Positions 3,138-30,000 of a stretch of DNA of 64,000 bases are shown one piece after another. This stretch comes from Macrostomum lignano (lineage: Eukaryota). The stretch covers positions 157,942 to 221,941 of the forward strand of contig NIVC01001917.1 in assembly GCA_002269645.1 (NCBI GenBank). The letters run 5' to 3'. The position numbers and the translations under genes are program-made. Every line of letters starts with the position of its first letter. The first letter of the stretch is position 1. The notes beneath the pieces were generated by a model. The model was not told where the DNA came from and ran no database searches. It saw nothing but the letters and a program-made list of their open reading frames with translations.

Positions 3138-4299
3138 ATGCACCGCCAATGCCAGAAAGTCAAGCTGCTGCTGTTGCTGCTGGGCTGCACAGCCGCCGGG
3201 CTGCTGTTCGCAAAGCTGCAAGCTCTGAGGGACCTTCAAGAGGCCAGCGCGACCCAGCTTGAAGGCGCATTCGCTAAGCAAGCTGTCCTTACTGGCAGGT
3301 CAGCTGCTGTCATCACAACTGAGCCAACGGTCCCGAACCTGACGGTGCCGCTGAAAACCCTGCCGCCTTCAACTGTGGAAACCGGATGCAAAAGCTTCAA
3401 AGAGCTGCGCGATCTGGACTTCCAACAGCCGGCTCTGCGGCGCGTCCTGTGCAGCGGGGTCAACGCGTACGAGAAGACAGCCGACCGCTTCCCATTGTGC
3501 CAACTGCGGAATCCCTTCGACGAGAGACTCCTCGGGGTTGTGCGCTCGGGCAGCGCCACCGCGGACCTGCTGGACGCGAGCAATTCCAAGGTGAAGATAT
3601 TCGTCTACCCTGACACAGACATGATCTCCGAGGCCATCAAGAAGAATCACCAGGGAAAAGGACCTGGTCCACGCCACCATGAAACTGGTGCAGAGGGTGC
3701 CGAACGTGACCTTCCTGGACGCTGGCTGCAACATTGGCGTGTACAGCCTGCTGGCGGCGAGGCTCGGCCTGCCCGTCGTGTCGCTGGACGCGAACATCCG
3801 CAACCTGCTTCGACTCCGCCTGAGCCTAAAAGCGTCTGCGCTGGACGCTGCTCTTGTGTGGAACTTCATCGGGTCCGGAGACACGCTGAGCTACCTCAAC
3901 TTCCCCGGGGACTGCAACGTCGGCGGAGCGACCAAGTTCGGCCGGGCCGTGACCGACTCGATTCCCGTGATGCCGGTACGCAGCGAGCGGTTGTGTGGTC
4001 TCATCGGCACGCAGAACGTCGTCATCAAGCTGGACATCGAGGGCGGTGAGGCCGACTTCCTGAGAACTTCCGGCTGCCTGTTCAGCCAGTTCACCATAGC
4101 GGCAGTGCAGATGGAGTTCCTCTCCGGCCACATGCAGGGCAACGACAGGGCCTTTATTATCGACTTTTTCACTAGCAGGAACTACACTGTGTGGAAGTCG
4201 GTGTCCTTGAAAGCGCTGGACGCTAGGACGATGAAAGAATCTGATGTGATTTGGATTCAGAAGAAATTCGAGTACCTGCTGCCGCTGCTTAAGTCTTGA
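3138..4299 (+). CDS. FkbM/Methyltransf_21-family SAM-dependent methyltransferase with N-terminal signal anchor; frameshift at ~3654
   Basis: ORF 3138 gives a hydrophobic anchor (LLLLLLGCTAAGLLF), a stem and DMISEAIKK. The second frame (ORF 3679) gives FLDAGCNIG, NVGG and KLDIEGGE. Adding 2 nt at 3654 restores Q-W-E-K-D and a ~387-aa protein. No introns. Confidence 0.85.
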
Positions 4300-9897: not shown

Positions 9898-12800
9898 GTA
9901 CAGTGCCCATCTGCGGCCTGCTGTCTGGTGGCAGCCGGCACGCACTGCGGGGCGTCCACGCCAGCCTGTGCCGCAACCAGGTGCCGCTGGTGCTCATCAA
10001 AGGAACCGGCGGCCTCGCCGACCTTCTAGCCGTCCTCATCGATGACCTCGCCGAAGTTGAGCACGCTAAGCACAAGAAGAAGAACATCGAACGCGAGCAG
10101 GACATTCTCGAGTTCAACCGGCTGCGCAACCTCATGCTGGACATCTGGACCCTGCCGCTGGGCACGGATCTCGACCGGGAGGTGGCCACGCTTGTCGACA
10201 TACTCCGCCGGAAGCAGAGCATCGAGATCTTCAGCCTTGACGAGGACGCGCCGTCGGATTTGGACGCGAAAATTCTGGCCTCTCTGCTCAACTCGGCCGG
10301 CACCGACGGCCACGAAGAGTCGGAGCGGTTCAACAAAGCGCAGCTGAAGATCGCCCTGGCACTGGATCGCAGCGACGTCGCCAAGCAGAAAGTGTTCGGC
10401 GAGAACAAGAAATGGCGCAAAGGCGACCTGGACAACTTCATGCGAGACGCGCTGCGGGACAACAAGGTGGCCTTCGTGAAGCTGTTTGTACAGCAGGGCT
10501 TCAGCCTGGAGCAGTTCGTCACCATCCAGCTGCTGGAGGATTTGTACACCGAGGATGTCACAACTGGGGTGGGTTTACGAACGCGTGGACCCCTGGAACT
10601 GCTCCCAGTATTGCTAGATAATAGCTGTGAACAGACAGTTCAAACTTAGTCAAACAATAATAGTCCGATAAGCAGAAACTTCTCGCTCTGTTCTTTTTTG
10701 TGCCAGAAGGACAGACTAATGCCTTTCTGACTTGAATACAAAATTTGCAATAAAAGTTGTTGCAAAAAATTTCAGAGTCAAACAATTGGAATCCTGAGAA
10801 ACGGACTGCAGGCTGCGGTCGGGAAGACGGTACGAATTTTTTCCTAATCTTGTTTGATAGTCACTCTATCGGCATGAAATCTGAAGGAAAAGTGCAGTTT
10901 CCACTCTAGATTCTAAGTCTACAACTCCATGGTTTAGTCAGCAGTTTCCACTCTAGATTCTAAGTCTAAAACTCCATGGTTTAGTCAGCAGTTTCCACTC
11001 TAGATTCTAAGTCTACAACTCCATGGTTTAGTCAGCAGTTTCCACTCTAGATTCTAAGTCTAAAACTCCATGGTTTAGTCAGCAGTTTCCGCTCTAGACT
11101 CTAAGTCTAAAACTCCATGGTTTAGTCAGCAGTTTCCACTCTAGATTCTAAGTCTAAAACTCCATGGTTTAGTCAGCAGTTTCCACTCTAGATTCTAGGT
11201 CTAAAACTCCATGGTTTAGTCAGCAATTTCTATTCCAGATTTCTAGATCTAAAAATCTACGGTTTCGAAGCTTTTCACTCCAGATTTTGTCACGAACTTC
11301 ATACTCACCTAGTATTCTCCTGTTATTCCAGGGGGTCGTTAACGTCACCATGGAAGACATTGGCAGAGTGCTGCTGCACATGATGGGCTCATTCTACAAG
11401 CCATTCTATCTCAGCAAAGAGTTTCAGAGAGACTTTCGAATTGGCGGTGAGTGACAAATTAAATTTTCTTTGTTGCTAAGTTAGTAAATATAATTAAAGT
11501 CATAAAGGCGGTACAGCATCTAATCGACTTCCATTGCAGATTCGGCCAAAGGCAAACACGGTCTTGGCTTTAGTAATGCCGCCTATGTTAAATTCAGCTC
11601 GAACGAGATTGACAGAAAAACATCTGGTAGGTTTGAGCGACGGCAAACTACGGATAAATGATGACCCACAGTGGAAGGTGCAGATGACCCACAGTGGAAG
11701 GTGCAGATGACCCACAGTGGAAGGTGCAGATGACCCACAGTGGAAGGTGCAGATGACCCACAGTGGAAGGTGCAGATGACCCACAGTGGAAGGTGCAGAT
11801 GACCCATAATGGAAGGTGCAGATGGCCCACAGTGGAAGGTGCAGATGACCCACAGTGGAAGGTGCAGATGACCCACAGTGAAATGTGCAGATGACCCACA
11901 GTGAAATGTGCAGATGACCCACAGTGAAATGTGCAGATGATCCACAGTGGAAGCTGCTAACCCCGAAATGTCCCCCCCACCTAGACGCGGGCAGCCACAT
12001 CTCCATGGAGCGACCGGCGCTGGACCTGTTCACCTGGAGCCTGCTCACTCAGCGTACCGCACTGGCCGAGTTCTTCTGGAGCCTAGAGAAGGAGTGCATT
12101 GCCGGGGCGCTGTTTGCGGCCATGCTGCTCAGAGAGTCCAGAGCGTTTAGTGACGATCTCACAGAGAAAGAGCAGCTGGAGGCGTTGGCCAAGTGAGACC
12201 GGATCTCGGATCTACTCTACTCTACTCTACTCTACTCTACTCTACTCCATTCTACTCTACTCTACTCTACTCTACTCAACTCTACTCTGCTCTACTCTAC
12301 TCTACTCTACTCTACTCTACTCTACTCTACTCTACTCTACTCTACTCTACTCTACTCTACTCTACTCTACTCTACTCTACTCTACTCTACTCTATTCTAC
12401 TCTACTCTACTTCATTCTACTCTACTCTACTTTACTCTACTCTACTCTACTCTACTTTACTCTACTCTACTCTACTCTACTCTACTCTACTCTACTCTAC
12501 TCTACTCTACTCTACTCTACTCTACTCTACTCTACTCCATTCTACTCTACTCTACTTTACTTTACTCTACTCTCTACTCAGTACTCAACTTCAAATTCCA
12601 CAGCGCATTCGAGGCCCGAGCCGAAGGCGTCCTCGAGGAGTGCTACCGAGACAACCAGAGCAACACCCAGGAGAACCTGGTCCGCGAGCTGCCCTTCTAC
12701 GGCCAGAGCACCTGTTTCGTGCTGGCTGCCGAAGGCGGCTCAATCAAGTTCATCTCCCATCGCTGCTGCCAGGAGATGCTGGACATCATCTGGAAAGGCA

Positions 12801-15800
12801 ATTTGTCCACGAAGAAGAACAGCTCGCTTAGGGTGAGGCTGGCAGCTGCAGAGTGGGATATCGCTTCCGACATTGTAACGTTTCAAATTTTCGGTCTTCG
12901 GGCACTGCCGCAAATCAAGGCAGCGGTCGATGCAGTCATGCACGCCCCATTCTGCTGAGCCATGAGCACGCATTTTGAGGGTGCTTGAGTAGCTGAGATG
13001 TCAATACTCATAAGGGGATTGCTGAAATGCTGTGGCTCATGGGGGGCAGTATCAAATCGACCGTTGAGCTACTCTGAGTCATAAAAAAACTTTTTAACTG
13101 CTCAACTAACGCAGTTTTTTTGCGGTCTCGGCTGCGGCCTCGCCTGCCCTCCGCTGCTGGCGCTGGTGATCAAGTTCAGCTGCGACGAGCTCGATGGCGT
13201 CGGCAGCTCGCCCAAACGCCCCTCTGAGACCTCCGGCGGCGGCTCAGCCGGTGCCGCCAGACGGAAAAGCATCGCCGCCGCCGCAGCGGCCGCCACGGCG
13301 ACTGGGCGAAAGTCGGGCTTAAAGAAAAACAAAGTAGACCCGGAGACTGGAGACCGGCTGCCTGACAGGTGATGAGGAGAGTCACGGAGTTGGGATATAG
13401 GCACATTGGGATATAGGCACATTGGGATATAGGCACATTGGGATATAGGCACATTGGGATATAGGCACATTGGGATATAGGCACATTGGGATATAGGCAC
13501 ATTGGGATATAGGCACATTGGGATATAGGCACATTGGGATATAGGCACATTGGGATATAGGCACATTGGGATATAGGCACATTGGGATATAGGCACATTG
13601 GGATATAGGCACATTGGGATATAGGCACATTGGGATATAGGCACATTGGGATATAGGCACATTGGGATATAGGCACATTGGGATATAGGCACATTGGGAT
13701 ATAGGCACATTGGGATATAGGCACATTGGGATATAGGCACATTGGGATATAGGCACATTGGGATATAGGCACATTGGGATATAGGCACATTGGGATATAG
13801 GCACATTGGGATATAGGCACATTGGGATATAGGCACATTGGGATATAGGCACATTGGGATATAGGCACATTGGGATATAGGCACATTGGGATATAGGCAC
13901 ATTGGGATATAGGCACATTGGGATATAGGCACATTGGGATATAGGCACATTGGGATATAGGCACATTGGGATATAGGCACATTGGGATATAGGCACATTG
14001 GGATATAGGCACATTGGGATATAGACACATTGGGATATAGGCACATTGGGATATAGACACATTGGGATATAGGCACATTGGTGGGAAGCAGACATATTGG
14101 GAAGCAGATACATTGGTGGGAAGCAGACACATTGGGAAGCAGACACATTGGGAAGCAGACACATTGGTGGGAAGCAGACACATTGGGAAGCAGACACATT
14201 GGGAAGCAGACACACTGGGAAGCAGACACATTGAGCAATGAACAAAGAAATCCCTGATTTGCCTTCTCTGTCATTATGTCAAAATTTCTAAATCCTACAA
14301 ACCGACAGAATTATAACTGGATTTGTTTCAACCAAAACCATGATTCGCAGAAGTCGCCGCTGCCGTTGCCTGTCGCCCCGAGAATTCGCAACCCGCATTC
14401 TGGATTTCTACTTCGCTCCGGTGGTTCGATTCATTTACTCTACTGTGAGTAGTGCAGTGAAGGAATTCTTCTACTGACAAGATTTAAAGAGCGAAATGTT
14501 TTGAAATTTTATTACGCTCGTAAAATGAGATTTGACGCTATTTACTATAACAAAAATTGATGGGTAATATGTTTCGAAACTTTAAAATATCGAAACGTCA
14601 TAAACTCGACATTTTTTTATTGTCGACGCTCGTGACGTTTTTGAAGTTTACAGTCTTCGAGCTTGTGTTGTTTTAAACTTGTGAATCTTCGAGCTTGTGT
14701 TGTTTTAAACTTGTGAGTCTTCGAGCTTGTGTTGTTTTAAACTTGTGAATCTTCGAGCTTGTGTTGTTTTAAACTTGTGAGTCTTCGAGCTTGTGTTGTT
14801 TTAAACTTGTGAATCTTCGAGCTTGTGTTGTTTTAAACTTGTGAGTCTTCGAGCTTGTGTTGTTTTAAACTTGTGAGTCTTCGGGCTTGTGTTGTTTTAA
14901 ACTTGTGAGTCTTCGGGCTTGTGTTGTTTTAAACTTGTGAGTCTTCGGGGTTGTGTTGTTTTAAACTTGTGAGTCTTCGAGCTTGTGTTGTTTTAAACTT
15001 GTGAGTCTTCGAGCTTGTGTTGTTTTAAACTTGTGAGTCTTCGAGCTTGTGTTGTTTTAAACTTGTGAGTCTTCGAGCTTGTGTTGTTTTAAACTTGTGA
15101 GTCTTCGAGCTTGTGTTGTTTTAAACTTGTGAGTCTTCGAGCTTGTGTTGTTTTAAACTTGTGAGTCTTCGAGCTTGTGTTGTTTTAAACTTGTGAGTCT
15201 TCGAGCTTGTGTTGTTTTAAACTTGTGAGTCTTCGAGCTTGTGGAGTTTCTAGTTTGTGAAGCTTCGAGCTTGTGATGTTTTGATCTTGTGAAATTTCGA
15301 GCTTGTGATGTTTTGATCTTGTGAAATTTCGAGCTTGTGATGTTTTGATCTTGTAAAATTTCGAGCTTGTGATGTTTTGATCTTGTGAAGTTTCGAGCTT
15401 GTGATGTTTTGATCTTGTAAAATTTTGAGCTTGTGATGTTTTGATCTTGTGAAGTTTCGAGCTTGTGATGTTTTGATCTTGTGAAGTTTCGAGCTTGTGA
15501 TGTTTTGATCTTGTAAAGTTTCGAGCTTGTGATGTTTTGATCTTGTGAAATTTTGAGCTTGTGATGTTTTGGTCTTGTGAAATTTCGAGCTTGTGAAATT
15601 TCGAGCTGATGGAGTTTCGAGCTTGTGAAGTTTCGAGCTTGTGAAATTTCGAGCTTGTGAACTTTCGAGCATTCAAAAATTTTCATAATTTGACGGGCTG
15701 CACCCTCTTTAACGCTAGTCTTACACGCACTTCGCACGCAGCTGGCGTACCTGATCTTCCTGGGAATTTACTCCTACGTCATGCTATTCCTATTCGACAA

Positions 15801-18800
15801 CGGCATGGACAACTGGTCGGCGATCCACCTGCTGCTCCTAGTCTGGGTGGTGTCCCTCGGCCTTGAGGAGATCCGTCAGGCCGCCCTGTCCGGGACCTCG
15901 TTCCGGTCGTACGTGTCGGACATGTGGAACATCATGGACATTATGGCCGTGCTGCTGTTCCTCATCGGCAGCTGTTTCTTCATAATGCGATCGATGGACA
16001 GCGTGGTGCAGCAGCTGTTCGTCACCGGCACTGACGTTGCCGCGTTGAAGAGCGCCAAGGAGACGCTGATCCGGTTGAGCAGAATCTGCCTGTGCATAGC
16101 GCTCTTCATCTTCTATATTCGTATACTGCAGGTGTTCTCCATTCACGTCAGCTTGGGCCCCAAAGTTGTCATGATTCAAAATATGGTGAGTGCTGCGCTA
16201 ATGCTGGTTGCTGCAATCTGAACAGATCATAAACAGTTAGATAAGTTGAGTCATAGACTAATTGAGTCATAGACAAATTGAGTCATAGAAACACTGAATA
16301 ATAAACAAATTGAGTCATAGACCAATTAGATAATAAATTGAGCCATAGACACATTGAGTTATAGACAAATTAGTTAATAGATAAATTGAGTCATAGACCC
16401 ATTGAGTCATAGATAAGTCATAGACATTGAGTCGTAGACAAGTCATAGACACTGAGTCGTAGATAAGTCATAGACATTGAGTCGTAGAAAAGTCATCGAC
16501 ATTGAGTCATAGACACATTAGTTAATAAATCAAATGAGTCATAGACAGATTTAGTCAGAGGTACGTTAGGCATTAGATTAATTTAATCATGGACGTATTG
16601 GATCAATTAGGTAATAGATTAGATTAGATAATTGACAAATTACGTCAAAGACACATTAAGTCATTAAAGCATATGTCATAGACACATTGGTTCACAGAAA
16701 TATTGGATCATAGAAATACTGAGTCATAGAAAAAAGGTCATAGACACATTAGGTAATAGATTAATTTAGTCATAGAAACATTGGGTAATAGATAAATTGA
16801 GTCCGACACATGAGTCATAGACACATTGAGTCATAGACACATTGAGTCATAGAAAAATCAAGTCATAGACACATTGAGTCATAGACACATTGAGTCATAG
16901 ACACATTGAGTCATAGACACATTGAGTCATAGACACATTGAGTCATAGAAAAATCAAGTCATAGACACATGAGTCATAGACACATTGAGTCATAGACACA
17001 TTGAGTCATAGAAAAATCAAGTCATAGACACATTGAGTCATAGACACATTGAGTCATAGACACATTGAGTCATAGAAACATCAAGTCATGGACATATTGA
17101 GTCATTAAAACTGGGTTATAGACACAAAATAACTCTAAATGAGTACATAAGCTCGTAAGATTCCTGAGATTCCTTCGTCCAAATCCCCTGGCGTTGCGCA
17201 CAGATCGTCAAAGACCTGCTGCCATTTCTGGTCATCTTTCTGCTGTTTATCCTGGCCTACGCCATCATGTGGTCCAGCATCCTGTTCCCTAAGAGCAGCC
17301 TGTCAATCGCCGAGTCAATGAGCGAACTTATGGCAATAATGAAGACGTCATATTTTCAGGTGTTCGGCGAACTCAAAGTGGATATGATGTCTGGGGATGG
17401 TGAGCCACTTCTAGATTATTAATTTACGAGCGTAATTAGCTGGAAACAAAGCAAACCAATTTTATAATCCATTCCGAATTTCCCCTTTCAGTGACTACTT
17501 TAAGTAAGTGATTTTCTATATGTAAATAAAAAGCATGAATATTATTTGTACGATTGCCACGATAACAAGGATAATCAGCTAGAGACAGGGGCATCACACT
17601 GAGATGACAAAGATAATCAGCTAGAGACAGGGGCATCACACTGAGATGACAAAGATAATCATGCTAGTGACAGGAGCAGCACACTGAGAAAACAAAGATA
17701 ATCATGCTAGTGACAGGAGCATCACACTGAGATGACAAAGATAATCATGCTAGTGACAGGGGCATCACACTGAGATGACAAAGATAATCATGCTAGTGAC
17801 AGGAGCATCACACTGAGAAAACAAAGATAATCATGCTAGTGACAGGAGCATCACACTGAGAAAACAATGATAATCATGCTAGTGATAGGGGCATCACACT
17901 GAGAAAACAAAGATAATGATGCTAGTGATAGGGGCATCACACTGAGATAACAAAGATAATGATGCTAGTGACAGGAGTATCACACTGAGAAAACAAAGAT
18001 AATCATGCTAGTGACAGGGGCATCACACTGAGAAAACAATGATAATCATGCTAGTGACAGGGGCATCACACTGAGATAACAAAGAGATAATCACGCTATA
18101 TGTACTATCACAAAGATAGTACAAATAGTCACCGAATTTATCTTACCCACTCAACATTCCAAACTGACTGATAACGCCAAATAATTTATTTCTAAGCCGA
18201 CCAGTGCAAAACCTCAAGCGTGGGCTGTCCAGACATCTGGGGCAAATGGCTGGCACCGATTCTGCTAGGAGTTCACATTGTGCTCACCAATGTGCTCCTG
18301 CTCAACCTGCTGATCGCAACGTTTTCGTGAGTTTTCTATTGTGGATAGCTTACCCCCCATTATGGATAGCCTACCCTCATTGTGGATAGCCTACCCCCGG
18401 CCCCATTATGGATAGACTACCCCCCTCCCCATTGTGGATAGCCTACCCCCCATTGTGGATAGCCTACCCCCATTGTGGATAGCCTACCCTCATTGTGGAT
18501 AGCCTAACCTCATTGTGGATAGCCTACCCCCGGCCCCATTATGGATAGCCTACCCCCCATTGTGGATAGCTTACCCCCCATTGTGGATAGCCTACCCTCA
18601 TTGTGGATAGCCTACCCTCATTGTGGATAGCCTACCCCCCATTGTGGATAGCCTACCCCCATTATTGATAGCCTACCCTCATTGTGGATAGCCTACCCCC
18701 CACTGTGGATAGCCTACCCCCATTGTGGATAGCCTACCCCATTGTGGATAGCCGCAGACACTCCTACCCCCCCCCATCCATTCTGGATAACCCCCACTCA

Positions 18801-21800
18801 ATGCCGCAGACACGTTACTAAAGCCACCAACACTCCACCAACACAACCAGGCACACCTACGAGGAGATACAGAGCTCCAGCACACAGCACTGGACCCTGC
18901 AGCGGTACATGATCATGCGAGAATACACCGAACGCAGTCCGATAGCTCCGCCTCTAATTATAGTGTGGCACCTGGTCTTTGTACTGTACGTGCTCGTGCA
19001 GCGCTGTCGCGGACATCGGGTATTCGAAAACGGACCATTTAGTAAGTGCTTGGGTCGAGGTTACTGTTACTAAGGTGACAGTAGCAGCACTGTTTACTAC
19101 TAATATTCCCAACCTTTTGTGCATCAAAATATCAACCAGTGATACTACGAGTAGACTGCCAGATATATCACTTTCAAGTAAAGTTGTTGAAAAGCATAAC
19201 GTCTACTCTTTTTTCAGTAGTTTTCTGCACATTGGCACCTAAAGTTGATGTGGCAGCTAAAATTTCCTTCCTTCCTCCGGGTTTTCGGCCTCAGGAGCGT
19301 ACGGGGCATTTAACTCTATGTACACAAGTAAACACAGGACGGACGAAACTCAGCCTAGGGGGCAGGCCCAATCTACTTGTAGCTCAGCCAATGAGAGAAC
19401 AGTAAGGATCGAGAGAGGTCAAAGTTAGACGGACGAAGCCCAGCTTAGAGAGGGGGCCCAATCTGGCTCAGCCAATCAGAGAACAGTAAGATAGAGGTTA
19501 AAGTCAGACTAAGTAGCTTACCCAGACTGAGGGATCCTTGATTCGGAAAATTAAGCTTCCAATACAGACGCCTAGCTTTTAGACGTCTATGGCCAACAAT
19601 CTCAATATTCCAGAGCGCAGTTACTCTGGCAACAGGCAGCGAGAGCGTCAGCTGATGCAGTGGGAGCACATTCGTGCCGTTGAGTTTCTGCGCGGCCAGG
19701 ACGATCCGAAACGACGGCGCAAGTCGGACACCAGGACCATTGTCCGGGCTGGCGGGGTGGGCGGCAACGCCACCAACATGAAGAAGGAGCTGGACTCAGT
19801 TCAGGAAGGCCTTGGCGACCTGTTTCGCGATTCGATTCGCGAAGTCGAGGTGAATGTGAAGCGAATCGATAATGTTGAGCGACGGCTTGAGGAGCTGGCG
19901 GAGATGGTGGCCAATCTGGCCAAATCTATGGGTGAGAAGCATTACGAGGTGAGTCCGGGACTCGAGCCTGTGTTTCTAAGGATTGTGTCAGCTGGTTAGT
20001 GTCGGAGCTGTTGTGTCTGTTCTAGTGACTGTTGTGTCTGTTCTAGTGACTGTTGTGTCTGTTCTAGTGTCTCTCTGTTGTGTCTGTTCTAGTGACTGTT
20101 GTGTCTGTTCTAGTGTCTCTCTGTTGTGTCTGTTCTAGTGACTGTTGTGTCTGTTCTAGTGTCTCTCTGGTGTGTCTGTTCTAGTGACTGTTGTGTCTGT
20201 TCTAGTGTCTCTCTGGTGTGTCTGTTCTAGTGACTGTTGTGTCTGATCTAGTGTCTGTTGTGTCTGTTCTAGTGTCTCTCTGTTGTGTCTGTTCTAGTGA
20301 CTGTTGTGTCTGATCTAGTCTGTTGTGTCTGTTCTAGTGACTGTTGTGTCTGATCTAGTCTGTTGTGTCTGTTCTAGTGACTGTTGTGTCTGTTCTAGTG
20401 TCTCTCTGTTGTGTCTGTTCTAGTGACTGTTGTGTCTGATCTAGTGACTGGTGTGTCTGTTCTAGTGTCTCTCTGTTGTGTCTGTTCTAGTGACTGTTGT
20501 GTCTGTTCTAGTGACTGTTGTGTCTGTTCTAGTGACTGTTGTGTCTGTTCTAGTGTCTCTCTGGTGTGTCTGTTCTAGTGACTGTTGTGTCTGTTCTAGT
20601 GACTGTTGTGTCTGTTCTAGTGACTGTTGTGTCTGTTCTAGTGTCTCTGTTGTGTCTGTTCTAGTGACTGTTGTGTCTGTTCTAGTGACTGTTGTGTCTG
20701 TTCTAGTGACTGTTGTGTCTGTTCTAGTGACTGTTGTGTCTGTTCTAGTGACTGTTGTGTCTGTTCTAGTGACTGTTGTGTCTGTTCTAGTGACTGTTGT
20801 GTCTGTTCTAGTGACTATTGTGTCTCTTCTAGTGACAGTTGTGTCTGTTCTAGTGTCTGCTGTGTCTGTTCTAGTGTCTGTTGTGTCTGTTCTAGTGACT
20901 GTTGTGTCTGTTCTAGTGTCTGTTGTGTCTGTTCTAGTGACTGTTGTGTCTGTTCTAGTGACTGTTGTGTCTGATCTAGTGTCTGTTGTGTCTGTTCTAG
21001 TGTCTCTCTGGTGTGTCTGTTCTAGTGTCTGTTGTGTCTGTTCTTGTGACTGTTGGGTCTATTTCAGTATATTTTTTGTCTAATTTCTAGACTTTCTGTT
21101 GCTGTGAAGAATCAAAATGCTATTGAATAGCTGCTTGCATTATTCAGTTGGTTACAAACTCAGCCTTCGCAAATGCATGCTCACGATCGGATTCTGATCC
21201 CTCCCCCCCCAGATGGTGACCATCATCCAGCACCAGTACGAGCAGTCCGAGGAGCGCACCCGTCGCCAGGCCATGACGCTGTCCGGAGGCTCTCGCAGCG
21301 ATCGCCGGACCACATCGCAGCCGGTCGCGGTGGACGACGACTTGAGCGTCCATCTGGGCAGCGAGGACTCGACCGAGGAGGAGCAGCGGCCGCGAGTTTG
21401 GCGCGGCAAACTGCAGCACCACCAGCTGGCCAGGCTAGTGCCGTACCAGCTGGACTCCGGCTCGGCCAGAGTGGCCGAGATGCCTGAAGTCTGGAGCAGC
21501 TCCGACTGGCCGGACAGAGCCGAGGCGGCCGGAGCTTTTAACGGATTCGACTCGAGCAGCGGGTTCCACAGGGGCTCGCATGCTGGGCGGTAAGACATTT
21601 CGTCCCGAGTGGTACAGTGACACTTTGTCCCAGGGAAATCGGACATTTCGTCCCGAGTGGTACAGTGACACTTTGTCCCAGGGAAATCGGACATTACGTC
21701 CCAGACTTACTGGAACATATCTTCCGAGGGGCAATCGGACACTTTCGTCCCAGGGGCATTTGAAAATTTTTGGCGAAGACCAAATTTGTGCATAGCGGCG

Positions 21801-22873
21801 AAATTTAAATGCACAATGGTAGAAAATGTAGTGACTACATTGTGAATGTATTTCACAATTATAATAATTGAGAATGAAGTGTCGATGGATTACCATTTGA
21901 AGTTATTAAATTTTATAATCAGAAATATCAACACCATCGCTAGCAAAAGAAGATGCAGCTACTCAGTTTCACTTTTACAGGAATCAGCTAATTTAATATT
22001 TTTAACCGACTGTTTCTTTAGTGCTCATTTGTCATTCGTTTTGAATTTAGACGATGTCAGAGTTAAACAAAATATATCAATAAATATAATATACATGAGC
22101 CTCTTTGAGTTAATTAAAACTAAGTCAGTAATTTGAAGCAGAAATTGAAAGCAAATTTCAACAAGAAGTTGGAACCCCACCCACCGCCGCCGCCACCCAG
22201 CTACGTGACTGACGAGGCCGGCCGCCCGATGAACCCCAGCGGCAAGCCGGGGGCACCGGACCGCAACCGGCTGCCGCTGTGGGGTCCCAACCACTGCCTC
22301 CACTTGGCCGTCACTCGTTGGCGACGAGACGATCGTCAGAACATCGCCAAGAAGGCTGGACGGCCGGTGCTGCAGGTTGCGGCGGTGCTGGACCGTCGGG
22401 GCGGCATGCAGCTGCCGTGGTATCACGTCAAGCACTGCCTGCCGAGCTGTATCGGTCCAGCCTCCGTGTCAGCTTCATCGGCTTCTTCGTCGACAGTTGG
22501 CCAGTGCGGCCTGCAGAACCTGCTGCGGGCCTGGCTGCGGGAGCGCATCGAGGCTCTGGACGCTGGCAGGCTGGGCGCCAAACGGCTGCACATTCAGCAG
22601 GAGGCGGTCACCGCCGCGGCCTGCAGCACAGTGTACACCGGCTTGCTCGACGACAGGGTGAACGGCGACAACGCCTGGCTGGAGACCGACTTGGTTAATT
22701 TGCACGAACACTTCAATTATAATTTTGAAGACGACGTTGTGACCGAGTGCCTGCGCGAGGGCGGCAGCGGCGAGCGGGTTGCCTGGATCGACGTGGCCAA
22801 TCGGAGGCTGATGCGACAGTCGCACAACACTCTGCTGCGGCTGGTGGCGCAGCAGCACGGAGCGTACTTTTGA
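9898..22873 (+). CDS. TRPM: TRPM2-like cation channel (MHR, six TM, TRP box, coiled coil, NUDT9-H); 5' exons not found in the window
   Basis: Phase-consistent GT-AG exons: 9898(approx)-10568, 11332-11446, 11540-11626, 11985-12192, 12604-12832, 13115-13368, 14351-14444, 15742-16185, 17204-17399, 18197-18326, 18851-19041, 19614-19948, 21213-21589, 22201-22873 (~1333 aa). Motifs: LKIALALDRSD, CCQEMLDIIWKG, DFYFAPVVRF, EEIRQ/WNIMD, LGPKVVMIQNM, YFQVFGE, LLNLLIATFS, WTLQRY, WGPNH, NGDNAWLET. Confidence 0.93.
10898..11270. repeat. 47-bp intronic minisatellite, ~8 copies
   Basis: TTTCCACTCTAGATTCTAAGTCTAAAACTCCATGGTTTAGTCAGCAG with 47-bp spacing. Confidence 0.95.
11660..11952. repeat. 23-bp intronic minisatellite
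   Basis: GATGACCCACAGTGGAAGGTGCA, ~13 copies. Confidence 0.95.
12211..12578. repeat. (TCTAC)n microsatellite
   Basis: About 70 pentamers filling the intron. Confidence 0.98.
13390..14232. repeat. 16-bp intronic minisatellite TTGGGATATAGGCACA, changing to TTGGGAAGCAGACACA at the 3' end
   Basis: About 40 near-perfect copies, then a variant block from ~14080. Confidence 0.98.
14650..15670. repeat. 32-bp intronic minisatellite in two variant blocks, ending in 16-bp monomers
   Basis: TTCGAGCTTGTGTTGTTTTAAACTTGTGAGTC, then TTCGAGCTTGTGATGTTTTGATCTTGTGAAAT, then TTCGAGCTTGTGAAAT. Confidence 0.96.
16245..17105. repeat. Degenerate 16-bp minisatellite GACACATTGAGTCATA
   Basis: Most regular at 16800-17090. 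The units contain TGAGTCA. Confidence 0.9.
17565..18090. repeat. 43-bp intronic minisatellite, ~12 copies
   Basis: CAAAGATAATCATGCTAGTGACAGG(G/A)GCATCACACTGAGATGA. Confidence 0.95.
18338..18755. repeat. 21-22 bp intronic minisatellite CATTGTGGATAGCCTACCCCC
   Basis: Begins ~10 nt after the donor at 18327. Confidence 0.95.
19995..21050. repeat. 21-bp intronic minisatellite TGTTGTGTCTGTTCTAGTGAC
   Basis: Explains the VTVVSVL periodic ORF at 20478. Confidence 0.96.
21213..22873 (+). other. NUDT9-homology domain of the TRPM gene, with a degenerate Nudix box
   Basis: HHQLARLVPY, FNGFD..RGSHAGR|YVTDEAGRPMNPSG, WGPNH..VTRW and VYTGLLDDRVNGDNAWLET all align by eye to NUDT9. There is no GGxxxxGE or REFxEE. 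Confidence 0.85.
21594..21755. repeat. 48-bp repeat, ~3 copies, starting at the splice donor
   Basis: GGACATTTCGTCCCGAGTGGTACAGTGACACTTTGTCCCAGGGAAATC. Confidence 0.9.
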
Positions 22874-24071: not shown

Positions 24072-27000
24072 AGTAAGTGAGCCGCTGTGTCGGTCTGTGT
24101 TGATCCCGAAAAGTTAAAATTTGTAATTAAATTTCCATTCATTTTTCAGTGTCCACGCGAAGCTCCCTACTGGCTTTAGTTCTGGGATTTTACCTGCTGC
24201 TGCAGCTGATAAGCGCCGCCCAGTACCAAGGTGACATTCCAGGTAGACACAGGCTCGTACGAGTATATTAATCTCGTGTTGTTGTTTTTAGTATCAGGAA
24301 TCTTTTTAACTCTATCCATTTTTTGTGCTGAGAATTTTCTTAACTACTACCATTTAAACAAATAACAAATACACGGATTAGATAAACAAATCTAAAACTT
24401 ACGTAAACAAATTTAACATTCAGATAAACAAATTTAACAATCATATTAAAAAATCTAACAACCAGATTAATAAATCTGACAATCAGATAAACAAATCTAA
24501 AAATTACGGAAACAAATTTAACATTCAGATAAACAAATTTAACAACCTGATAAACAAATCTAACAACCGAATGAACAAATCTAACAACCAGACAAACAAA
24601 TCTAACAACTAGATAAACATATATAACAATCAAATTAACAAATTTAACAATCACATAAACAAATCTAACAAACAGATTAACAGGTTAGAATTAGATATTA
24701 GAGTTATTTTAAAAATGTGCTAATGCAGATAAAAGTTGCCGGTCTTAAGTGGCACATCATAAATAAAAATCAATATTCTAATATACTAAAAATGAAATGC
24801 TTGGTTGCTTGCTTGTAATTGATTTTCTCTCGAACGGCTCAACCGATTTTCTTCAAACTTGCACCATTCGATCAGAAATTTTCCCGGGACGGTACATGCA
24901 TATTGGCTAAGAAATTGCTCAATGTTAAAGGGATTAAATATTCGAAAAACATGATTTTTTGCAAAGGTCAAGCAGCTCTTTCGACCTGAAATGCATTGTA
25001 AGAATGCTAGAGAAAAATCTGACTGGTTGAATTCTGATTCTGAAATAGATTGCATCACAATACACTTTATTTATCGTCTGTGTACTGGCTGAATTTGACA
25101 CTCAATTGAATTGCGTCACAGCTTTGAGGGTGAAAGTATAGTGCAGTACTGAATTTATATTACGTAACCATATTGTTAACTTTCATAGACACTGGTACTG
25201 ACTTGCCTAAGAAATTGATTATGTCATAACTGCTTCGCGTGACTTTTTACTCTACCTGACTTGGTGTGAGTGTTGAATTAATTATATAAGTGGTACAAAT
25301 TCACTGATAACTTCGATGAGAGCTAGCCTAGAGCTGAGCAGACCAGACTGCTAATGCAGCGACCTGGGTTCGAATCTAAGTAGTTTAAAAGTAGTAGTGT
25401 AAAATTTTTTATTAAAAGCTTTTATTAAAGGACTAAATAAAAACACTTAGATTACTGCACTCGATAAGCTAAGGATTATTGCTCTTGGCAAACCAAGGAA
25501 TACTGCACTCGATAAGCCAAGGATTATTGCTCTTGGCAAACCAAGGATTACTGCACTCGATAAGCCATGGATTATTGCTATTAATAAACCAAGGATTACT
25601 GCACTCGATAAGCCAAGGATTATTGCTATTAATAAACCATGAATTACTGCACTCGATAAGCCAAGGATTATTGCTATTAATAAACCAAGGATTACTGCAC
25701 TCATAAGCCATGGATTATTGCTATTAATAAACCAAGGATTACTGCACTCGATAAGCCAAGGACTATTGCTATTAATAAACCAAGGATTACTGCACTCAAT
25801 AAACCAAGGACTATTGCTCTTGGCAAACCAAGGATTACTGCACTCGATAAGCCAAGGACTATTGCTCTTGGCAAACCAAGGATTACTGCACTCGATAAGC
25901 CATGGATTATTGCTATTAATAAACCAAGGATTACTGCACTCGATAAGCCAAGGATTATTGCTATTAATAAACTAAGGATTACTGCACTCGATAAACCAAG
26001 GATTATTGCTATTAATAAACCAAGGATTATGCACTTGGCAAACCAAGGATTACTGCAATCGATAAGCCAAGGATTATTGCTATTAATAAACCAAGCATTA
26101 CTGCACTCAATAAACCAATGACTATTGCTATTAATAAACCAAGGATTACTGCACTCAAAAAACCAAGGACTATTGCTCTTGGCAAACCAAGGATTACTGC
26201 ACTCGATAAGCCAAGGATTATTGCTATTAATAAACCAAGGATTACTGCACTCGATAAACCAAGGATTATTGCTATTAATAAACCAAGGATTACTGCACTC
26301 GATAAGCCAAGGATTATTGCTATTAATAAACCAAGGATTATGCACTTGGCAAACCAAGGATTACTGCACTCGATAAGCCAAGGATTATTGCTATTAATAA
26401 ACCAAGGATTACTGCACTCAATAAACCAAGGACTATTGCTATTAATAAACCAAGGATTACTGCACTCAATAAACCAAGGACTATTGCTCTTGGCAAACCA
26501 AGGATTACTGCACTCGATAAGCCAAGGACTATTGCTCTTGGCAAACCAAGGATTACTGCACTCGATAAGCCATGGATTATTGCTATTAATAAACCAAGGA
26601 TTACTGCACTCGATAAGCCAAGGATTATTGCTATTAATAAACCAAGGATTACTGCACTCGATAAACCAAGGATTATGCACTTGGCAAACCAAGGATTACT
26701 GCACTCGATAAGCCAAGGATTATTGCTATTAATAAACCAAGGATTACTGCACTCAATAAACCAAGGACTATTGCTATTAATAAACCAAGGATTACTGCAC
26801 TCAATAAACCAAGGACTATTGCTCTTGGCAAACCAAGGATTACTGCACTCGATAAGCCAAGGACTATTGCTCTTGGCAAACCAAGGATTACTGCACTCGA
26901 TAAGCCATGGATTATTGCTATTAATAAACCAAGGATTACTGCACTCGATAAGCCAAGGATTATTGCTATTAATAAACCAAGGATTACTGCACTCGATAAG

Positions 27001-30000
27001 GCATGGATTATTGCTATTAATAAACCAAGGATTACTGCACTCGATAAGCCAAGGATTATTGCTATTAATAAACCATGAATTACTGCACTCGATAAGCCAA
27101 GGATTATTGCTATTAATAAACCAAGGATTACTGCACTCGATAAGCCATGGATTATTGCTATTAATAAACCAAGGATTACTGCACTCGATAGCCAAGGATT
27201 ACTGCGCTTGATAAGCTTGGCTACATGTATAGGATTATTTCTATCCAGGGATGCTTGCTATTTAGGGATTCTTGCTATGTGCAGGATGCTTGCTATCTGG
27301 AAGGATGCTTCTACATTATTTGGGGTATGCTTGCTATCTGCAAGATGCTTGCTATCTGCAAGATGCTTGCTATCTGCAGATGCTTGCTATCTGGGTGGAT
27401 GCTTGCTAGGAGTATTAGGGGATGCTTGCTACTGGGGGGATGCTTGCTGTCTTGGGAATATTTTCTATTTAGGGGTAATGACTAAAATTCATGAGAGCTA
27501 GCCTAGAGGTAAACAGACTAAACTGCTAAATGCAGGGACGATGGTTCGAATTTTTAGAGAGTAGAGTTTTTTTAATTAAAGCCTTTTAACGCCAAGACAA
27601 AAAAAATTATGGAAGCGTCATGTAAACAATCATACAAGCGTCATGTAAACAATCATAGAAGCGTCATGTAAACAATCATAGAAGCGTCATGTAAAAATCA
27701 TAGAAGCGTCATGTAAAAATCATAGAAGCGTAATGTAAACAATCATAGAAGCGTCATGTTAAAATCATAAAAGCGTCATGTAAACAATCATACAAGCGTC
27801 ATGTAAACAATCATAGAAGCGTCATGTAAAAAAATCATAGAAGCGTCATGTTAAAATCATAAAAGCGTCATAAAAAATCATAGAAGCGTCATGCAAGCAA
27901 TCATAGAAGCGTAATGTAAACAATCATAGAAGCGTCATGTTAAAATCATACAAGCGTCATGTAAACAATCATACAAGCGTCATGTAAACAATCATAGAAG
28001 CGTCATGTAAAAAAATCATAGAAGCGTCATGTTAAAATCATAGAAGCGTCATGTAAACAATCATAGAAGCGTCATGTAAACAATCATAGAAGCGTCATGT
28101 AAAAATCATAGAAGCGTCATGTAAAAATCATAGAAGCGTCATGTAAACAATCATAAAAGCGTCATGTAAACAATCATAGAAGCGTCATGTATACAATCAT
28201 AGAAGCGTCATGTAAACAATCATAGAAGCGTCATGTAAAAAATCATAGAAGCGTCATGTAAAAATCATAGAAGCGTCATGTAAAAATCATAGAAGCGTCA
28301 TGTAAAAATCATAGAAGCGTCATGTAAAAATCATAGAAGCGTCAGGTAAAAAATCATAGAAGCGTCATGTAAAAATCATAAAAGCGTCATGTAAAAAATC
28401 ATAGAAGCGTCATGTAAACAATCATACAAGCGTCATGTAAACAATCATAGAAGCGTCATGTAAAAATCATACAAGCGTCATGTAAACAAGCATAGAAGCG
28501 TCATGAAAAAATTATAGAAGCCTCATATAAAAACTAATGAAAGTGTGTCATTTAAAAAATTAAGAAGCATCATGGAAGAATAAAAGAAGCGTAACGTAAA
28601 AATCAAAAGAAGCGTCATGTCAGACATGAAAGAAATGTCATATAAAAATTAAATGAAGCTATAGTACAGTGCTGTGCTGGGGAGAATTACTGAGACGTCA
28701 AGGCTCACAGAGAATAACTGAGATTGCAGGGGGGTTTCTGAGATGTTAAAGCAAAAGTCAGAAGCTACTTCAAAGTACATGTACTTTACTTAAGTTTTTT
28801 ATTGCATTCTTTGTTGGCTTGCCACGGTGGGGGGGCGCTGATAGAAGAAGAGTCATGTAAAAATAAAAGGAGCACTATGTATACATAAAATAAAAGTCAT
28901 GTCAAAGTTAAAAGATTCATTTGGGAATTGCTACGATGTCAAAGCTTGGAGGGAATCGTTATAGTGCTGTGATTCTTAAAGAAGGAATCACTTAAATGCC
29001 AAGGCTTAGGGAAGAAGAATTGCTGTGATTTCAAGGCTTTAGGTTGGGTGAAAGTTAGGTTTACGTCAGGTTTGGGTTGAGGGTTAGATTTTAGCGCGTT
29101 TCAAGGTTAACAGGGGATTTTTTAGATTTCAAGGTTTATGGGGGGCATCGCTGACATGTCAAGGCTTACGAGGGGAATCTATCTATCTATCTATAGCTGA
29201 GATGTCAAGGCTCACGGGGGAATAAATGAGATGTCAAGGCTAATGTCAGAAGCTACATGTAGTTTATTGGAAAAAAGTTATTACATTATTTGTTGGCTCC
29301 TCACGGGAGGGATCGCTGATAGAAAAAGCGTAATGTAAAAAAAAAAGAAGCTTCATGTCAAAGTTAAGAGATTCATTTGGGAATCCCTACGATGTCGAGG
29401 CTTGCAGGGAATCGCTATAATGCTGTAGTAGTGCTATAGACTCTTAGAGAGAATTACTGAAATTTCAATGCTTTAGGGTTAGGGTTAGGGTTAGGGTTAG
29501 AAAATAGACAGATTTTTTAAGATTTCAAGGCTTGTGGGAGCATTGCTGAGATGTCAAGGGGGGAGTTGATATGTTAAGGCTTGTGGGGGGATTGCTGACA
29601 TGTCAAGGCTTACAAGGGTACTGGTAGCGTACTGAAGCATACTGGTAGAAGTAGCTCTGAAAGAAGGCAAGTATGGTTGAATTTCAATGTCTGTTATAAA
29701 ATTCTGCACAAACATGTTTTATTGGTACATAAGCCTGGAATTAAAATGAGAATTCGATTCCTAGCCCCCCTCCCTAAGAATTTTTTTTCATTTAAAAGGA
29801 TTCGTCCCTTGCTTATTGGCCACCCCGAAGGCCATTTTTTATCAAAAATGATAAAAATAATTTTTATCAAACACGTTGACATATACAGGGCTCTAAACTA
29901 AAAACTGTAAAAAGTTGATAGTTTTGTTTTACCTAAAATGCGTTATTAACGATCTCCAAAAATTCCTATTTTAAGCTTAAGCTTAAGAAAAACACTTAAA

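What the first reader, a model, noticed from the sequence alone, without database searches (positions are those of the whole stretch)
9898..22873. TRPM2-like channel with both ADP-ribose sites degenerate but the Ca2+ site and filter glutamate intact
Seen: the MHR1/2 loops read GGSRHA (9927-9944) and GTGGLAD (10002-10022), where human TRPM2 has GGPGT and GSGRVAD. The phosphate-binding Arg (human R358) is therefore Gly at 10011. In NUDT9-H, GRTG..GRG is GKPGAPDRN and the Nudix box (PGG..GE..REFGEE) is PWYHVK..LRAWLRERIE. The Ca2+ ligands EEIRQ (15865) and WNIMD (15925) and the pore FGE (17363) are retained. Established: characterised invertebrate TRPM2s such as Nematostella are ADPRase-active chanzymes with a Glu in the filter, while vertebrate ones lost catalysis. 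Inference: an independent loss, giving a Ca2+-gated, ADPR-insensitive channel with a vestigial Nudix domain and possibly another ligand.
Basis: partly seen in the sequence, partly recalled or inferred. Interest (0 to 1): 0.7.

Follow-up and report, generated by a model that had tools for sequence, protein, structure and literature searches.

The report
Flatworm TRPM channel with dead Nudix domain
This is most of a gene from the free-living flatworm Macrostomum lignano for an ion channel related to TRPM2 and to the schistosome praziquantel target; its enzyme-like tail has lost its catalytic and ADP-ribose-contact residues, a loss shared by all sampled flatworm relatives and not special to this gene.

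Summary
The window holds 15 canonical GT-AG exons (9898-22873, + strand). They encode the C-terminal 1352 residues of Macrostomum lignano gene Mlig025325. The full protein is 1889 aa; its first 533 aa (ankyrin repeats and SLOG start) lie just off the window's 5' edge, across a 12.5-kb intron.

The Ca2+ site and the pore Glu are intact. The human R358 equivalent is Gly. The Nudix box is gone, although the NUDT9 fold is retained.

These changes are not specific to this gene. Arg-to-Gly is seen in 10 of 11 flatworm relatives with that region aligned. The Nudix box is replaced by a conserved PW..H..C..C motif in all 12 sampled flatworm NUDT9-H domains, from Macrostomum to Schistosoma and Taenia. 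These channels form a monophyletic clade that includes TRPM_PZQ. This gene sits in an orphan sister subclade and is not the TRPM_PZQ orthologue.

So the loss is independent of the vertebrate one, but ancient and phylum-wide. The domain is conserved rather than vestigial. The N-terminal site is remodelled, not erased: R302 and probably Y295 persist.

ADPR insensitivity and Ca2+ gating remain untested inferences. Verdict: a new member of a known, poorly characterised family; moderate interest.

The parts
9898..10568 (+). First exon in the window (phase-1 acceptor). It encodes the second half of MHR1/2 and the start of MHR3. It contains GGSRHA (9927-9944) and GTGGLAD (10002-10022; Gly at 10011-10013 replaces human R358). 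The GenBank model P0001 starts at the internal Met at 10134.
   Evidence: 100% identical to residues 534-757 of the full-length copy P0173
10776..10829 (+). Exon, MHR3 (18 aa)
11332..11446 (+). Exon, MHR3
11540..11626 (+). Exon, MHR3 linker
11985..12192 (+). Exon, MHR3/4 (Pfam PF25508, TRPM2-like domain)
12604..12832 (+). Exon, MHR4
13115..13368 (+). Exon, low-complexity linker before pre-S1. The GenBank models use a GC donor at 13356. A canonical GT donor at 13368 adds four residues (LPDR) in the same phase.
14351..14444 (+). Exon, pre-S1 helix (FYFAPVVRF)
15742..16185 (+). Exon, S1 to the S4-S5 linker. Ca2+-site ligands are EEIRQ (15865-15879; human E843/Q846) and WNIMD (15925-15939; human N869/D872). 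The S4 Arg is kept.
17204..17399 (+). Exon, S5, pore helix and selectivity filter FGE (17363-17371)
17490..17503 (+). Possible 12-14 nt micro-exon (VTTLT) that the GenBank models of the sister copies insert into the pore turret. No placement gives both a canonical GT donor and a canonical AG acceptor. The frame is kept whether or not it is included.
18197..18326 (+). Exon, pore loop and S6
18851..19041 (+). Exon, TRP helix (HWTLQRYMIMREYTER). REY at 18918-18926 keeps the TRP-helix Glu of the Ca2+ site.
19614..19948 (+). Exon, post-TRP region; the rib/pole (coiled-coil) assignment is by position only
21213..21589 (+). Exon, acidic/Ser-rich linker to NUDT9-H
22201..22873 (+). Last exon: the whole NUDT9-H domain plus the stop codon. 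Features: GKPGAPDRN 22241-22267 (degenerate GRTG..GRG loop); PWYHVKHC..C 22415 onward in place of PGG..GE; an 18-residue Ser/Ala-rich stretch at 22451-22504 (about 14 residues longer than in relatives); LRAWLRERIE 22523-22552 in place of REFxEE; DDRVNGDNAW 22649-22678 (human R1433 becomes Val); LMRQSH 22808-22825 (human Y1485 becomes Arg).

Best explanation
The region encodes residues 534-1889 of a Macrostomum lignano TRPM channel, gene Mlig025325. It belongs to the flatworm-specific clade of NUDT9-H-bearing ('nudix') TRPM channels that also contains the praziquantel target TRPM_PZQ, but it lies in a separate, uncharacterised subclade.

Shown:
- The gene is intact and under purifying selection.
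- It has the full TRPM architecture, an invertebrate-type Glu selectivity filter and all five Ca2+-site ligands.
- Its NUDT9-H domain keeps the NUDT9 fold.
- That domain lacks the G-x5-E and RE.xEE catalytic signature and the residues that contact ADPR in human TRPM2 (R1433, Y1485).
- This state is shared with all sampled flatworm relatives, so it was inherited from an early flatworm ancestor.
- The N-terminal MHR1/2 nucleotide cleft is remodelled: G208D, a one-residue loop deletion, M215S, T336H, T339R and R358G, with R302 retained.

Inferred:
- The protein forms a Ca2+-permeable non-selective cation channel.
- It needs intracellular Ca2+ as a co-activator.
- It does not hydrolyse ADPR and is probably not gated by ADPR.
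- Its real stimulus is most likely something else, acting on the transmembrane VSLD/TRP pocket (as praziquantel does in TRPM_PZQ) or on the cytosolic domains.
For: Gene model and selection:
- 15 GT-AG exons with no stop codons.
- Against the other genomic copy L001: 17 synonymous versus 6 non-synonymous differences, pN/pS 0.11. Exons are 98-100% identical against 84-98% for the rest of the locus (mostly intron).
- The full-length copy P0173 (1889 aa) and its locus show that the missing N-terminal exons lie across a 12.5-kb intron, just upstream of the window start.

Homology and domains:
- Nematostella, zebrafish and human TRPM2 match at E = 7e-90 to 2e-69.
- Pfam finds LSDAT_euk, TRPM2 and Ion_trans.
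- The Ca2+ site and filter are retained.

NUDT9-H domain:
- Homologous to NUDT9 at E = 3e-20.
- AF2 model pLDDT 78.9; Foldseek top hit is NUDT9 1qvj at 2.2e-11.
- The Nudix box is replaced in all 12 flatworm sequences, while mollusc, brachiopod and echinoderm relatives keep PGG..GE..(R/N)EFxEE.
- R1433 and Y1485 contact ADPR in human TRPM2 (PMC6759353). Here they are Val and Arg.

N-terminal site:
- R358 becomes Gly in 10 of 11 flatworm sequences aligned at that position.
- N-site mapping onto human TRPM2.

Phylogeny:
- NJ tree on 717 columns: flatworm clade bootstrap 100; the subclade with this gene, Mlig003066 and the trematode/cestode 'TRPM2'-annotated proteins 99; the TRPM_PZQ subclade separate at 94.
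- TRPM_PZQ identity was fixed by the exact N/R/D spacing of 126/163.

Literature:
- Removing NUDT9-H, or mutating MHR residues, does not affect praziquantel activation of Sm.TRPM_PZQ.
Against: - No functional data exist for this subclade.
- The R302 equivalent, and a GRYG motif matching human G-Q-Y295-G, are retained in the N-terminal site.
- The isolated human MHR1/2 domain with R358A still binds ADPR with Kd of about 8 uM (PMC13060097). A single Arg-to-Gly change therefore does not prove loss of binding.
- The predicted Nudix helix carries R-E-R-I-E-A, and the paralogue P0005 has D and E at the same two positions. Residual metal binding in a shifted register is not excluded.
- An Arg sits one residue before the R1433 position.
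- The N-terminal 533 residues were read from a sister copy that is about 99% identical over the shared region, not from this window.
- The tree is neighbour-joining only.
Confidence: 0.6

Rival explanations
1. The channel is still gated by ADPR, or by a related nucleotide such as 2'-deoxy-ADPR or IDPR, through the remodelled N-terminal MHR1/2 cleft. This is how Nematostella TRPM2 works. The NUDT9-H domain would then be merely non-catalytic.
For: The R302 equivalent and a GRYG motif (Y295) are retained in the full-length copy. The N-terminal site alone suffices for gating in invertebrate TRPM2 (PMC7201883). Human R358A still binds ADPR at Kd 7.8 uM. One trematode relative has Lys at the R358 position.
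Against: Five of the eight mapped pocket positions are changed: G208D, M215S, T336H, T339R and R358G. The beta5-alpha3 loop is also one residue shorter. M215A, Y295A and R302A/R358A abolish ADPR currents in human TRPM2. The TDG-for-TGG change in the glycine-rich loop is seen in most flatworm sequences aligned there.
Confidence: 0.2
2. The flatworm NUDT9-H domain has been repurposed. The Nudix loop-helix was replaced by a His/Cys cluster that binds a metal (for example Zn2+) or senses redox state. The domain would then be a new regulatory module rather than a dead enzyme.
For: The H-x4-C-x5-C pattern after PW is invariant in all 12 flatworm sequences. A further Cys lies two residues before PW in the TRPM_PZQ subclade and its Neodermata-only sister subclade. 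The motif is absent from non-flatworm TRPM2. The domain has been retained from Macrostomum to tapeworms, and there is no amino-acid change among the three Mlig025325 copies.
Against: This rests on a sequence pattern only. The AF2 confidence in this segment is low to moderate (pLDDT 46-77) and the coordinates could not be inspected. In this gene an 18-residue Ser/Ala-rich stretch separates the two Cys. Cytosolic Cys conservation can have other causes.
Confidence: 0.15
3. The locus is a decaying, 5'-truncated duplicate (a pseudogene). The GenBank model P0001, which starts at an internal Met and lacks the SLOG domain, suggests this.
For: No N-terminal exons are found anywhere in the 64-kb window. 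The GenBank protein for the collinear copy is N-terminally short.
Against: The window begins inside the 12.5-kb intron that, in locus L003, separates the N-terminal exons from this exon. The ORF is intact with all junctions canonical. pN/pS is 0.11 and exons are more conserved than the rest of the locus. The 79 codons before the internal Met are conserved with the paralogues.
Confidence: 0.03
4. It is the M. lignano orthologue of TRPM_PZQ, the praziquantel-activated channel already cloned and tested as Ml.TRPM_PZQ.
For: Same phylum-specific clade and same architecture. The S4 Arg and the TRP-helix E-Y..R are retained.
Against: The tree puts other M. lignano genes (Mlig001812, Mlig004938, A0A1I8HSQ2) with TRPM_PZQ at bootstrap 94, and puts this gene in the sister subclade at 99. 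The three variable pocket positions read S/V/E here, against N/I/E reported for Ml.TRPM_PZQ.
Confidence: 0.03

Closest known systems
Flatworm 'nudix-subclade' TRPM channels (TRPM_PZQ and its two NUDT9-H-bearing schistosome paralogues; planarian Smed-TRPM-a1/-f and DjTRPMa)
   Same: Monophyletic with them (bootstrap 100). Same architecture: SLOG/MHR, 6TM, TRP helix and C-terminal NUDT9-H. Same replacement of the Nudix box by PW..H..C..C, and the same Y1485-to-Arg change. The R358-to-Gly change is shared with 9 of the 10 relatives aligned there.
   Different: It is not in the TRPM_PZQ subclade, and its pocket residues are S/V/E. Together with its paralogue Mlig003066 it has additionally lost the GRTG..GKG loop that other flatworm members keep. 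Its Nudix-box region is about 14 residues longer because of a Ser/Ala-rich stretch. Unlike its trematode subclade relatives P0008 and P0009, it keeps the Ca2+ site.
Nematostella vectensis TRPM2 (nvTRPM2, PDB 6co7), an ADPR-gated chanzyme
   Same: Best solved-structure match (E = 6.6e-90). Glu in the filter (YGEL versus FGEL), an identical Ca2+-site pattern, and a NUDT9-H domain.
   Different: nvTRPM2 has GSGR, a canonical Nudix box and ADPRase activity (PMC6461439). This protein has GTGG and no Nudix box. The post-filter acidic helix LDE reads VDM here.
Human TRPM2
   Same: Non-canonical Nudix box, the same fold, the Ca2+ site, and an R302 equivalent.
   Different: Human TRPM2 keeps R358, M215, R1433 and Y1485 and binds ADPR at both sites. 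It has Gln, not Glu, in the filter. The two losses of catalysis are independent.
Human NUDT9 (PDB 1q33 / 1qvj), mitochondrial ADPR pyrophosphatase
   Same: The last exon is homologous (E = 3e-20), and the predicted fold matches best (Foldseek 2.2e-11, TM 0.60).
   Different: The central 70 residues carrying the Nudix box do not align. The PGG..GE and REFGEE signatures are missing.

Membership tests
TRPM (melastatin) channel | N-terminal SLOG/MHR1-2 domain | tested here: met
   The second half is encoded by exon 9898-10568 and aligns to TRPM2 MHR1/2. The first half lies off the window, but is present in the sister copy P0173 (about 99% identical over the shared region) with Pfam LSDAT_euk at 2.6e-34.
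TRPM (melastatin) channel | MHR3/4, six-TM ion-transport domain, and TRP helix with the W..QRY motif | tested here: met
   Pfam PF25508 at 3e-52 and PF00520 at 5e-12. The TRP helix HWTLQRYMIMREY aligns to TRPM2.
TRPM2-type chanzyme (ADPR-gated, ADPRase-active, as in Nematostella and Salpingoeca) | C-terminal NUDT9-homology domain with the NUDT9 fold | tested here: met
   phmmer E = 3e-20 to NUDT9. AF2 model plus Foldseek top hit 1qvj.
TRPM2-type chanzyme (ADPR-gated, ADPRase-active, as in Nematostella and Salpingoeca) | Canonical Nudix box G-x5-E-x7-RE(U)xEE | tested here: not met
   The aligned segment reads PWYHVKHC...C...RAWLRE (or RERIEA in a +4 register). The G-x5-E part is absent. At most two of the three Glu could be present.
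TRPM2-type chanzyme (ADPR-gated, ADPRase-active, as in Nematostella and Salpingoeca) | Conserved N-terminal ADPR pocket (human M215, Y295, R302, R358, G333/T336/T339) | tested here: not met
   R358G, T336H and T339R lie in the window. M215S, G208D and a loop deletion are seen in the sister copy. R302 is kept and Y295 is ambiguous.
TRPM2-type chanzyme (ADPR-gated, ADPRase-active, as in Nematostella and Salpingoeca) | ADPR-evoked, Ca2+-dependent current, and ADPR hydrolysis | not testable with these tools
   Needs patch clamp and an enzyme assay.
TRPM Ca2+ co-activator site (TRPM2/4/5/8) | S2 E and Q, S3 N and D, and a TRP-helix E | tested here: met
   EEIRQ, WNIMD and REY align with the consensus columns.
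Flatworm nudix-subclade TRPM | Groups within the monophyletic flatworm NUDT9-H TRPM clade | tested here: met
   NJ tree, bootstrap 100 for the clade and 99 for the subclade.
Flatworm nudix-subclade TRPM | Derived NUDT9-H signature PW(Y/F)..H-x4-C-x5-C, and Arg at the human Y1485 position | tested here: met
   Present here as PWYHVKHCLPSC...C and LMRQSH. Shared by 12 of 12 flatworm sequences. This signature was defined here, not taken from the literature.
TRPM_PZQ (praziquantel-activated channel) | Orthology with Sm.TRPM_PZQ and the pocket residues (S1 Asn; S4-S5 Thr, Ser or Ile; TRP Asp or Glu) | tested here: not met
   It falls in the sister subclade. The pocket reads Ser / Val / Glu. The TRPM_PZQ reference P0010 was verified by the 126/163 spacing.

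The most novel reading that the evidence does not exclude
Flatworms as a phylum converted the NUDT9-H domain of their TRPM2-like channels from an ADPR hydrolase into a different, still-constrained module. A conserved His/Cys cluster replaces the Nudix helix-loop, and the N-terminal nucleotide cleft is remodelled. The whole clade, including the praziquantel target, would then be gated by something other than ADPR, possibly with metal or redox input through the new motif. This would also be a second, independent loss of TRPM2 catalysis in which the invertebrate Glu pore was kept. That would uncouple two traits reported to have been lost together in vertebrates.
Probability: 0.2. Interest if true: 0.6.

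Novelty: new member of a known kind. Interest (0 to 1): 0.38.

Why it matters
TRPM_PZQ, a close relative, is the target of the main anti-schistosome drug. A 2024 review from the field states that nothing is known about ligand binding or enzymatic capacity of its NUDT9-H domain (PMC11731825).

The comparison made here gives a clear, testable prediction for the whole flatworm clade: no ADPRase activity and probably no ADPR gating.

It also shows that the published generalisation that Nudix boxes are 'canonical in all invertebrates' (PMC6461439) has a phylum-level exception.

M. lignano is a harmless, transgenic-ready laboratory flatworm, so this gene is a convenient model for asking what these channels sense. 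For the gene itself the result is ordinary: an inherited family trait, not a new event.

Tried and rejected
1. Searching the window for the N-terminal exons. tblastn with turtle TRPM2 and with M. lignano paralogues P0003, P0005, P0006 and P0007 found nothing upstream of 9898 or anywhere else. This was resolved only when the 90%-identity cluster of P0001 yielded the full-length copy P0173 and its locus L003.

2. The spliced model could not be submitted to the representative search. A substring of P0001 was accepted instead.

3. A word-indexed homologue search with the P0005 N-terminus returned nothing, not even P0005 itself. That search was wasted.

4. The pseudogene/truncation hypothesis was rejected.

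5. The TRPM_PZQ-orthologue hypothesis was rejected. I had briefly suspected the long (about 2300 aa) Neodermata-only subclade of being TRPM_PZQ because of its size. The exact N1388/R1514/D1677 spacing showed that P0010 is the orthologue.

6. A regex search for a canonical micro-exon encoding VTTLT found none. The only candidate (17490-17503) has a non-canonical junction.

7. The geometry of the His/Cys cluster and of E114/E117 in the AF2 model could not be checked, because model coordinates are not exposed.

8. The supplement of PMC9910428 that would name the Ml.TRPM_PZQ gene is not held.

Full report
**What is there.** The window is genomic DNA of the free-living flatworm Macrostomum lignano. 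It is collinear, at 84-98% nucleotide identity, with contig NIVC01001346.1 of assembly GCA_002269645.1. It is also collinear with a second locus on NIVC01001371.1.

On the + strand, 15 exons with canonical AG/GT boundaries (9898-22873) join into an uninterrupted reading frame of 1352 codons. The GenBank protein PAA69120.1 (BOX15_Mlig025325g1, P0001) is the same gene, started at an internal Met (10134). It differs by five substitutions and two junction choices.

The first exon begins in codon phase 1, so upstream coding exons must exist. None is detectable anywhere in the window with turtle TRPM2 or with three M. lignano paralogues as probes.

The explanation came from the 90%-identity cluster of P0001. 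PAA68780.1 (Mlig025325g2, P0173) is 1889 aa long. Its residues 534-757 are identical to the window's first exon. In its locus the N-terminal exons are separated from that exon by a 12.5-kb intron. Window base 1 maps about 2.6 kb into that intron.

The gene is therefore not truncated. Its first 533 residues (ankyrin repeats plus the first half of the SLOG/MHR1-2 domain; Pfam) simply lie off the 5' edge of the window.

Against the L001 copy there are 17 synonymous and 6 non-synonymous differences (pN/pS 0.11). Exons are 98-100% identical. The NUDT9-H exon has one synonymous change and no amino-acid change. This is a constrained gene, not a pseudogene.

- The channel body matches Nematostella TRPM2 (6co7) at E = 6.6e-90, and zebrafish and human TRPM2 at about 1e-70.
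- In those alignments, zebrafish GGPGT/GSGR(334)LAD and human GGPGT/GSGR(358)VAD pair column for column with GGSRH/GTGGLAD. Gly therefore replaces the phosphate-binding Arg.
- Of the nearby conserved residues human G333, T336 and T339 (bioRxiv 10.1101/2024.03.18.584035), G333 is kept while T336 and T339 become His and Arg.
- The Ca2+-site ligands (EEIRQ, WNIMD, and the Glu of REY in the TRP helix) and the filter FGEL are conserved.
- The last exon is homologous to human NUDT9 (E = 3.1e-20), but only through its two flanks. The central roughly 70 residues that should hold the Nudix box do not align.
- An AlphaFold2 model built on a 16-sequence alignment (pLDDT 78.9, pTM 0.76) finds NUDT9 (1qvj, E = 2.2e-11) and the NUDT9-H domains of TRPM2 structures as its best structural matches. 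The fold is therefore retained.

**What the wider comparison shows.** An exhaustive HMMER search of 1.84 billion representative proteins gave the following ranking:

1. M. lignano paralogues: Mlig003066 at 53% identity, Mlig001812 at 42%, and A0A1I8HSQ2.
2. Trematode and cestode proteins.
3. Mollusc, brachiopod and echinoderm TRPM2-like proteins.

A neighbour-joining tree (717 columns, 100 bootstraps) recovers a monophyletic flatworm clade (100) with three subclades:

- A: this gene with Mlig003066, an unnamed sequence, and the trematode/cestode proteins annotated 'TRPM2' (99).
- B: a Neodermata-only group of very long proteins (100).
- C: TRPM_PZQ with three other M. lignano genes (94).

The TRPM_PZQ identity of subclade C was fixed with the S. 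rodhaini protein. It has Asn, Arg and Asp spaced by exactly 126 and 163 residues, as in Sm.TRPM_PZQ N1388/R1514/D1677, and Thr at the 1518 position. This gene is therefore not the praziquantel-channel orthologue. Its three variable pocket positions read Ser/Val/Glu. It belongs to what the field calls the 'nudix subclade' of flatworm TRPMs, whose other members are orphans (PMC11731825).

- The Arg of GSGR is Gly in 10 of 11 flatworm sequences aligned there, and Lys in one.
- In all 12 flatworm NUDT9-H domains, PGG-x4-GE is replaced by PW(Y/F)x3H-x4-C-x5-C. In the TRPM_PZQ and Neodermata-only subclades REFxEE is replaced by (R/S/A)F(I/V)xRR; subclade A has other replacements, none of which keeps the Glu signature in the aligned register. 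Lingula, bivalve, gastropod and crinoid relatives keep a canonical box.
- Human Y1485, which stacks on the adenine of ADPR, is Arg in 11 of the 12; in the twelfth the column is unreliable. Human R1433, which binds the alpha-phosphate (PMC6759353), is a non-basic residue in every flatworm sequence aligned at that column (Leu in the TRPM_PZQ and Neodermata-only subclades, Val in this gene and its trematode relatives).
- In the N-terminal cleft, read from P0173, the glycine-rich beta5-alpha3 loop TGGSHTGVM(215) has become TDG-YGGLS. R302 is kept, and a GRYG motif probably corresponds to G-Q-Y295-G. HMMER, however, places an Ala there because of a 2-5-residue insertion.

This gene and Mlig003066 alone have additionally lost the GRTG..GKG loop that the other flatworm members keep. 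This gene also has a Ser/Ala-rich stretch that makes the region about 14 residues longer than in its relatives.

**Interpretation.** It happened early in flatworm evolution, though, and this gene merely inherited it.

'Vestigial' is not a good description. The domain has been kept, with a new invariant His/Cys signature, from Macrostomorpha to tapeworms.

The most likely working model has three parts:

- a tetrameric, Ca2+-permeable non-selective cation channel with the usual TRPM Ca2+ co-activator site;
- a non-catalytic NUDT9-H domain that does not bind ADPR in the human manner;
- an agonist other than ADPR.

This model is consistent with work on Sm.TRPM_PZQ. There, deleting NUDT9-H or mutating 19 MHR residues leaves activation through the transmembrane pocket intact.

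The steps from sequence to 'ADPR-insensitive' and 'Ca2+-gated' are inference. Three counter-arguments stand:

- R302, and probably Y295, are retained.
- Isolated human MHR1/2 with R358A still binds ADPR at 7.8 uM (PMC13060097).
- An R-E-R-I-E-A stretch sits on the predicted Nudix helix, and Mlig003066 has Asp and Glu at the same two positions. This could be a shifted remnant of RE.xEE.

**Relation to the literature.** Iordanov et al. [quoted passage not shown] Their text does not mention flatworms. A 2026 survey of TRPM evolution likewise does not mention them. No held paper combines 'Nudix box', TRPM and schistosomes.

The flatworm clade is thus an apparently undescribed exception: the Nudix box is lost while the Glu filter is kept. 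The family itself is known, including the presence of a NUDT9-H domain in TRPM_PZQ and in planarian TRPMs.

**Verdict.** The gene is a new, uncharacterised member of a known flatworm TRPM family. What is modestly new is the phylum-wide pattern, not this locus.

Noticed in passing
window 3120-4296 (+ strand): An open reading stretch resembling an FkbM-type methyltransferase lies inside the 12.5-kb TRPM intron on the same strand. Pfam PF05050 scores 21.8 bits, just under the 22.7 cut-off. The frame changes near 3620. The region is collinear in both other loci (L001, L003), but no gene is called there.
   Followed up: partly
window 1-1067, 10894-11265, 11660-11957, 12211-12573, 13390-14233, 14654-15659, 16238-17105, 17561-18098, 18338-18753, 20008-21060: Most of the longer introns of this gene (8 of the 14 inside the window, plus the large 5' intron) carry a long minisatellite or microsatellite array, with periods of 5 to 47 bp and up to 73 copies. 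Array lengths differ between the window and the two GenBank loci, and this accounts for most of the length differences.
   Followed up: partly
window 17490-17503: The GenBank models of the sister copies insert VTTLT into the pore turret from a 12-14 nt micro-exon. No placement of its boundaries gives both a GT donor and an AG acceptor. This may be a real unusual junction or an annotation artefact.
   Followed up: partly
window 13356 versus 13368: There are two in-phase donors for the linker exon. The GenBank models use the GC donor. A canonical CAG|GTGATG donor 12 nt downstream would add LPDR.
   Followed up: no
window 22415-22510 and the flatworm homologues (alignment): An invariant His and two Cys (plus a third Cys in two of the subclades) replace the Nudix loop in all 12 flatworm NUDT9-H domains. 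The pattern looks like a small metal-binding or redox motif. No held paper that was searched mentions it.
   Followed up: partly
off-window: P0173 residues 109-198 and about 300-315 (locus L003 3001-8117): The full-length protein has genuine ankyrin repeats (Pfam Ank_2, 7e-9) N-terminal to the SLOG domain, which is unusual for a TRPM. It also has a C-x-C-G-x5-H stretch resembling the conserved MHR1/2 zinc motif of TRPM2.
   Followed up: no
P0008/P0159 (Schistosoma) and P0009/P0160 (Clonorchis, Opisthorchis), alignment: The trematode members of the same subclade have lost the Ca2+-site ligands (EHIFQ / WKCLE instead of EEIRQ / WNxxD). The Macrostomum gene keeps them.
   Followed up: no
window 53991-54764 (- strand) and 57466-58884 (- strand): There is a CLASP N-terminal-domain-like exon (Pfam PF12348, 1.8e-10). 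There is also a long, repetitive open frame whose many weak coiled-coil-type Pfam matches suggest low-complexity repeats. These are other genes in the window, unrelated to the finding.
   Followed up: no
window 25450-27205, 27601-28649, 30702-32775: Three large tandem arrays (units of 48/311, 23/45 and 49 bp) lie downstream of the TRPM gene. About 5 kb (24790-30080) has no counterpart in locus L001 or L003.
   Followed up: no
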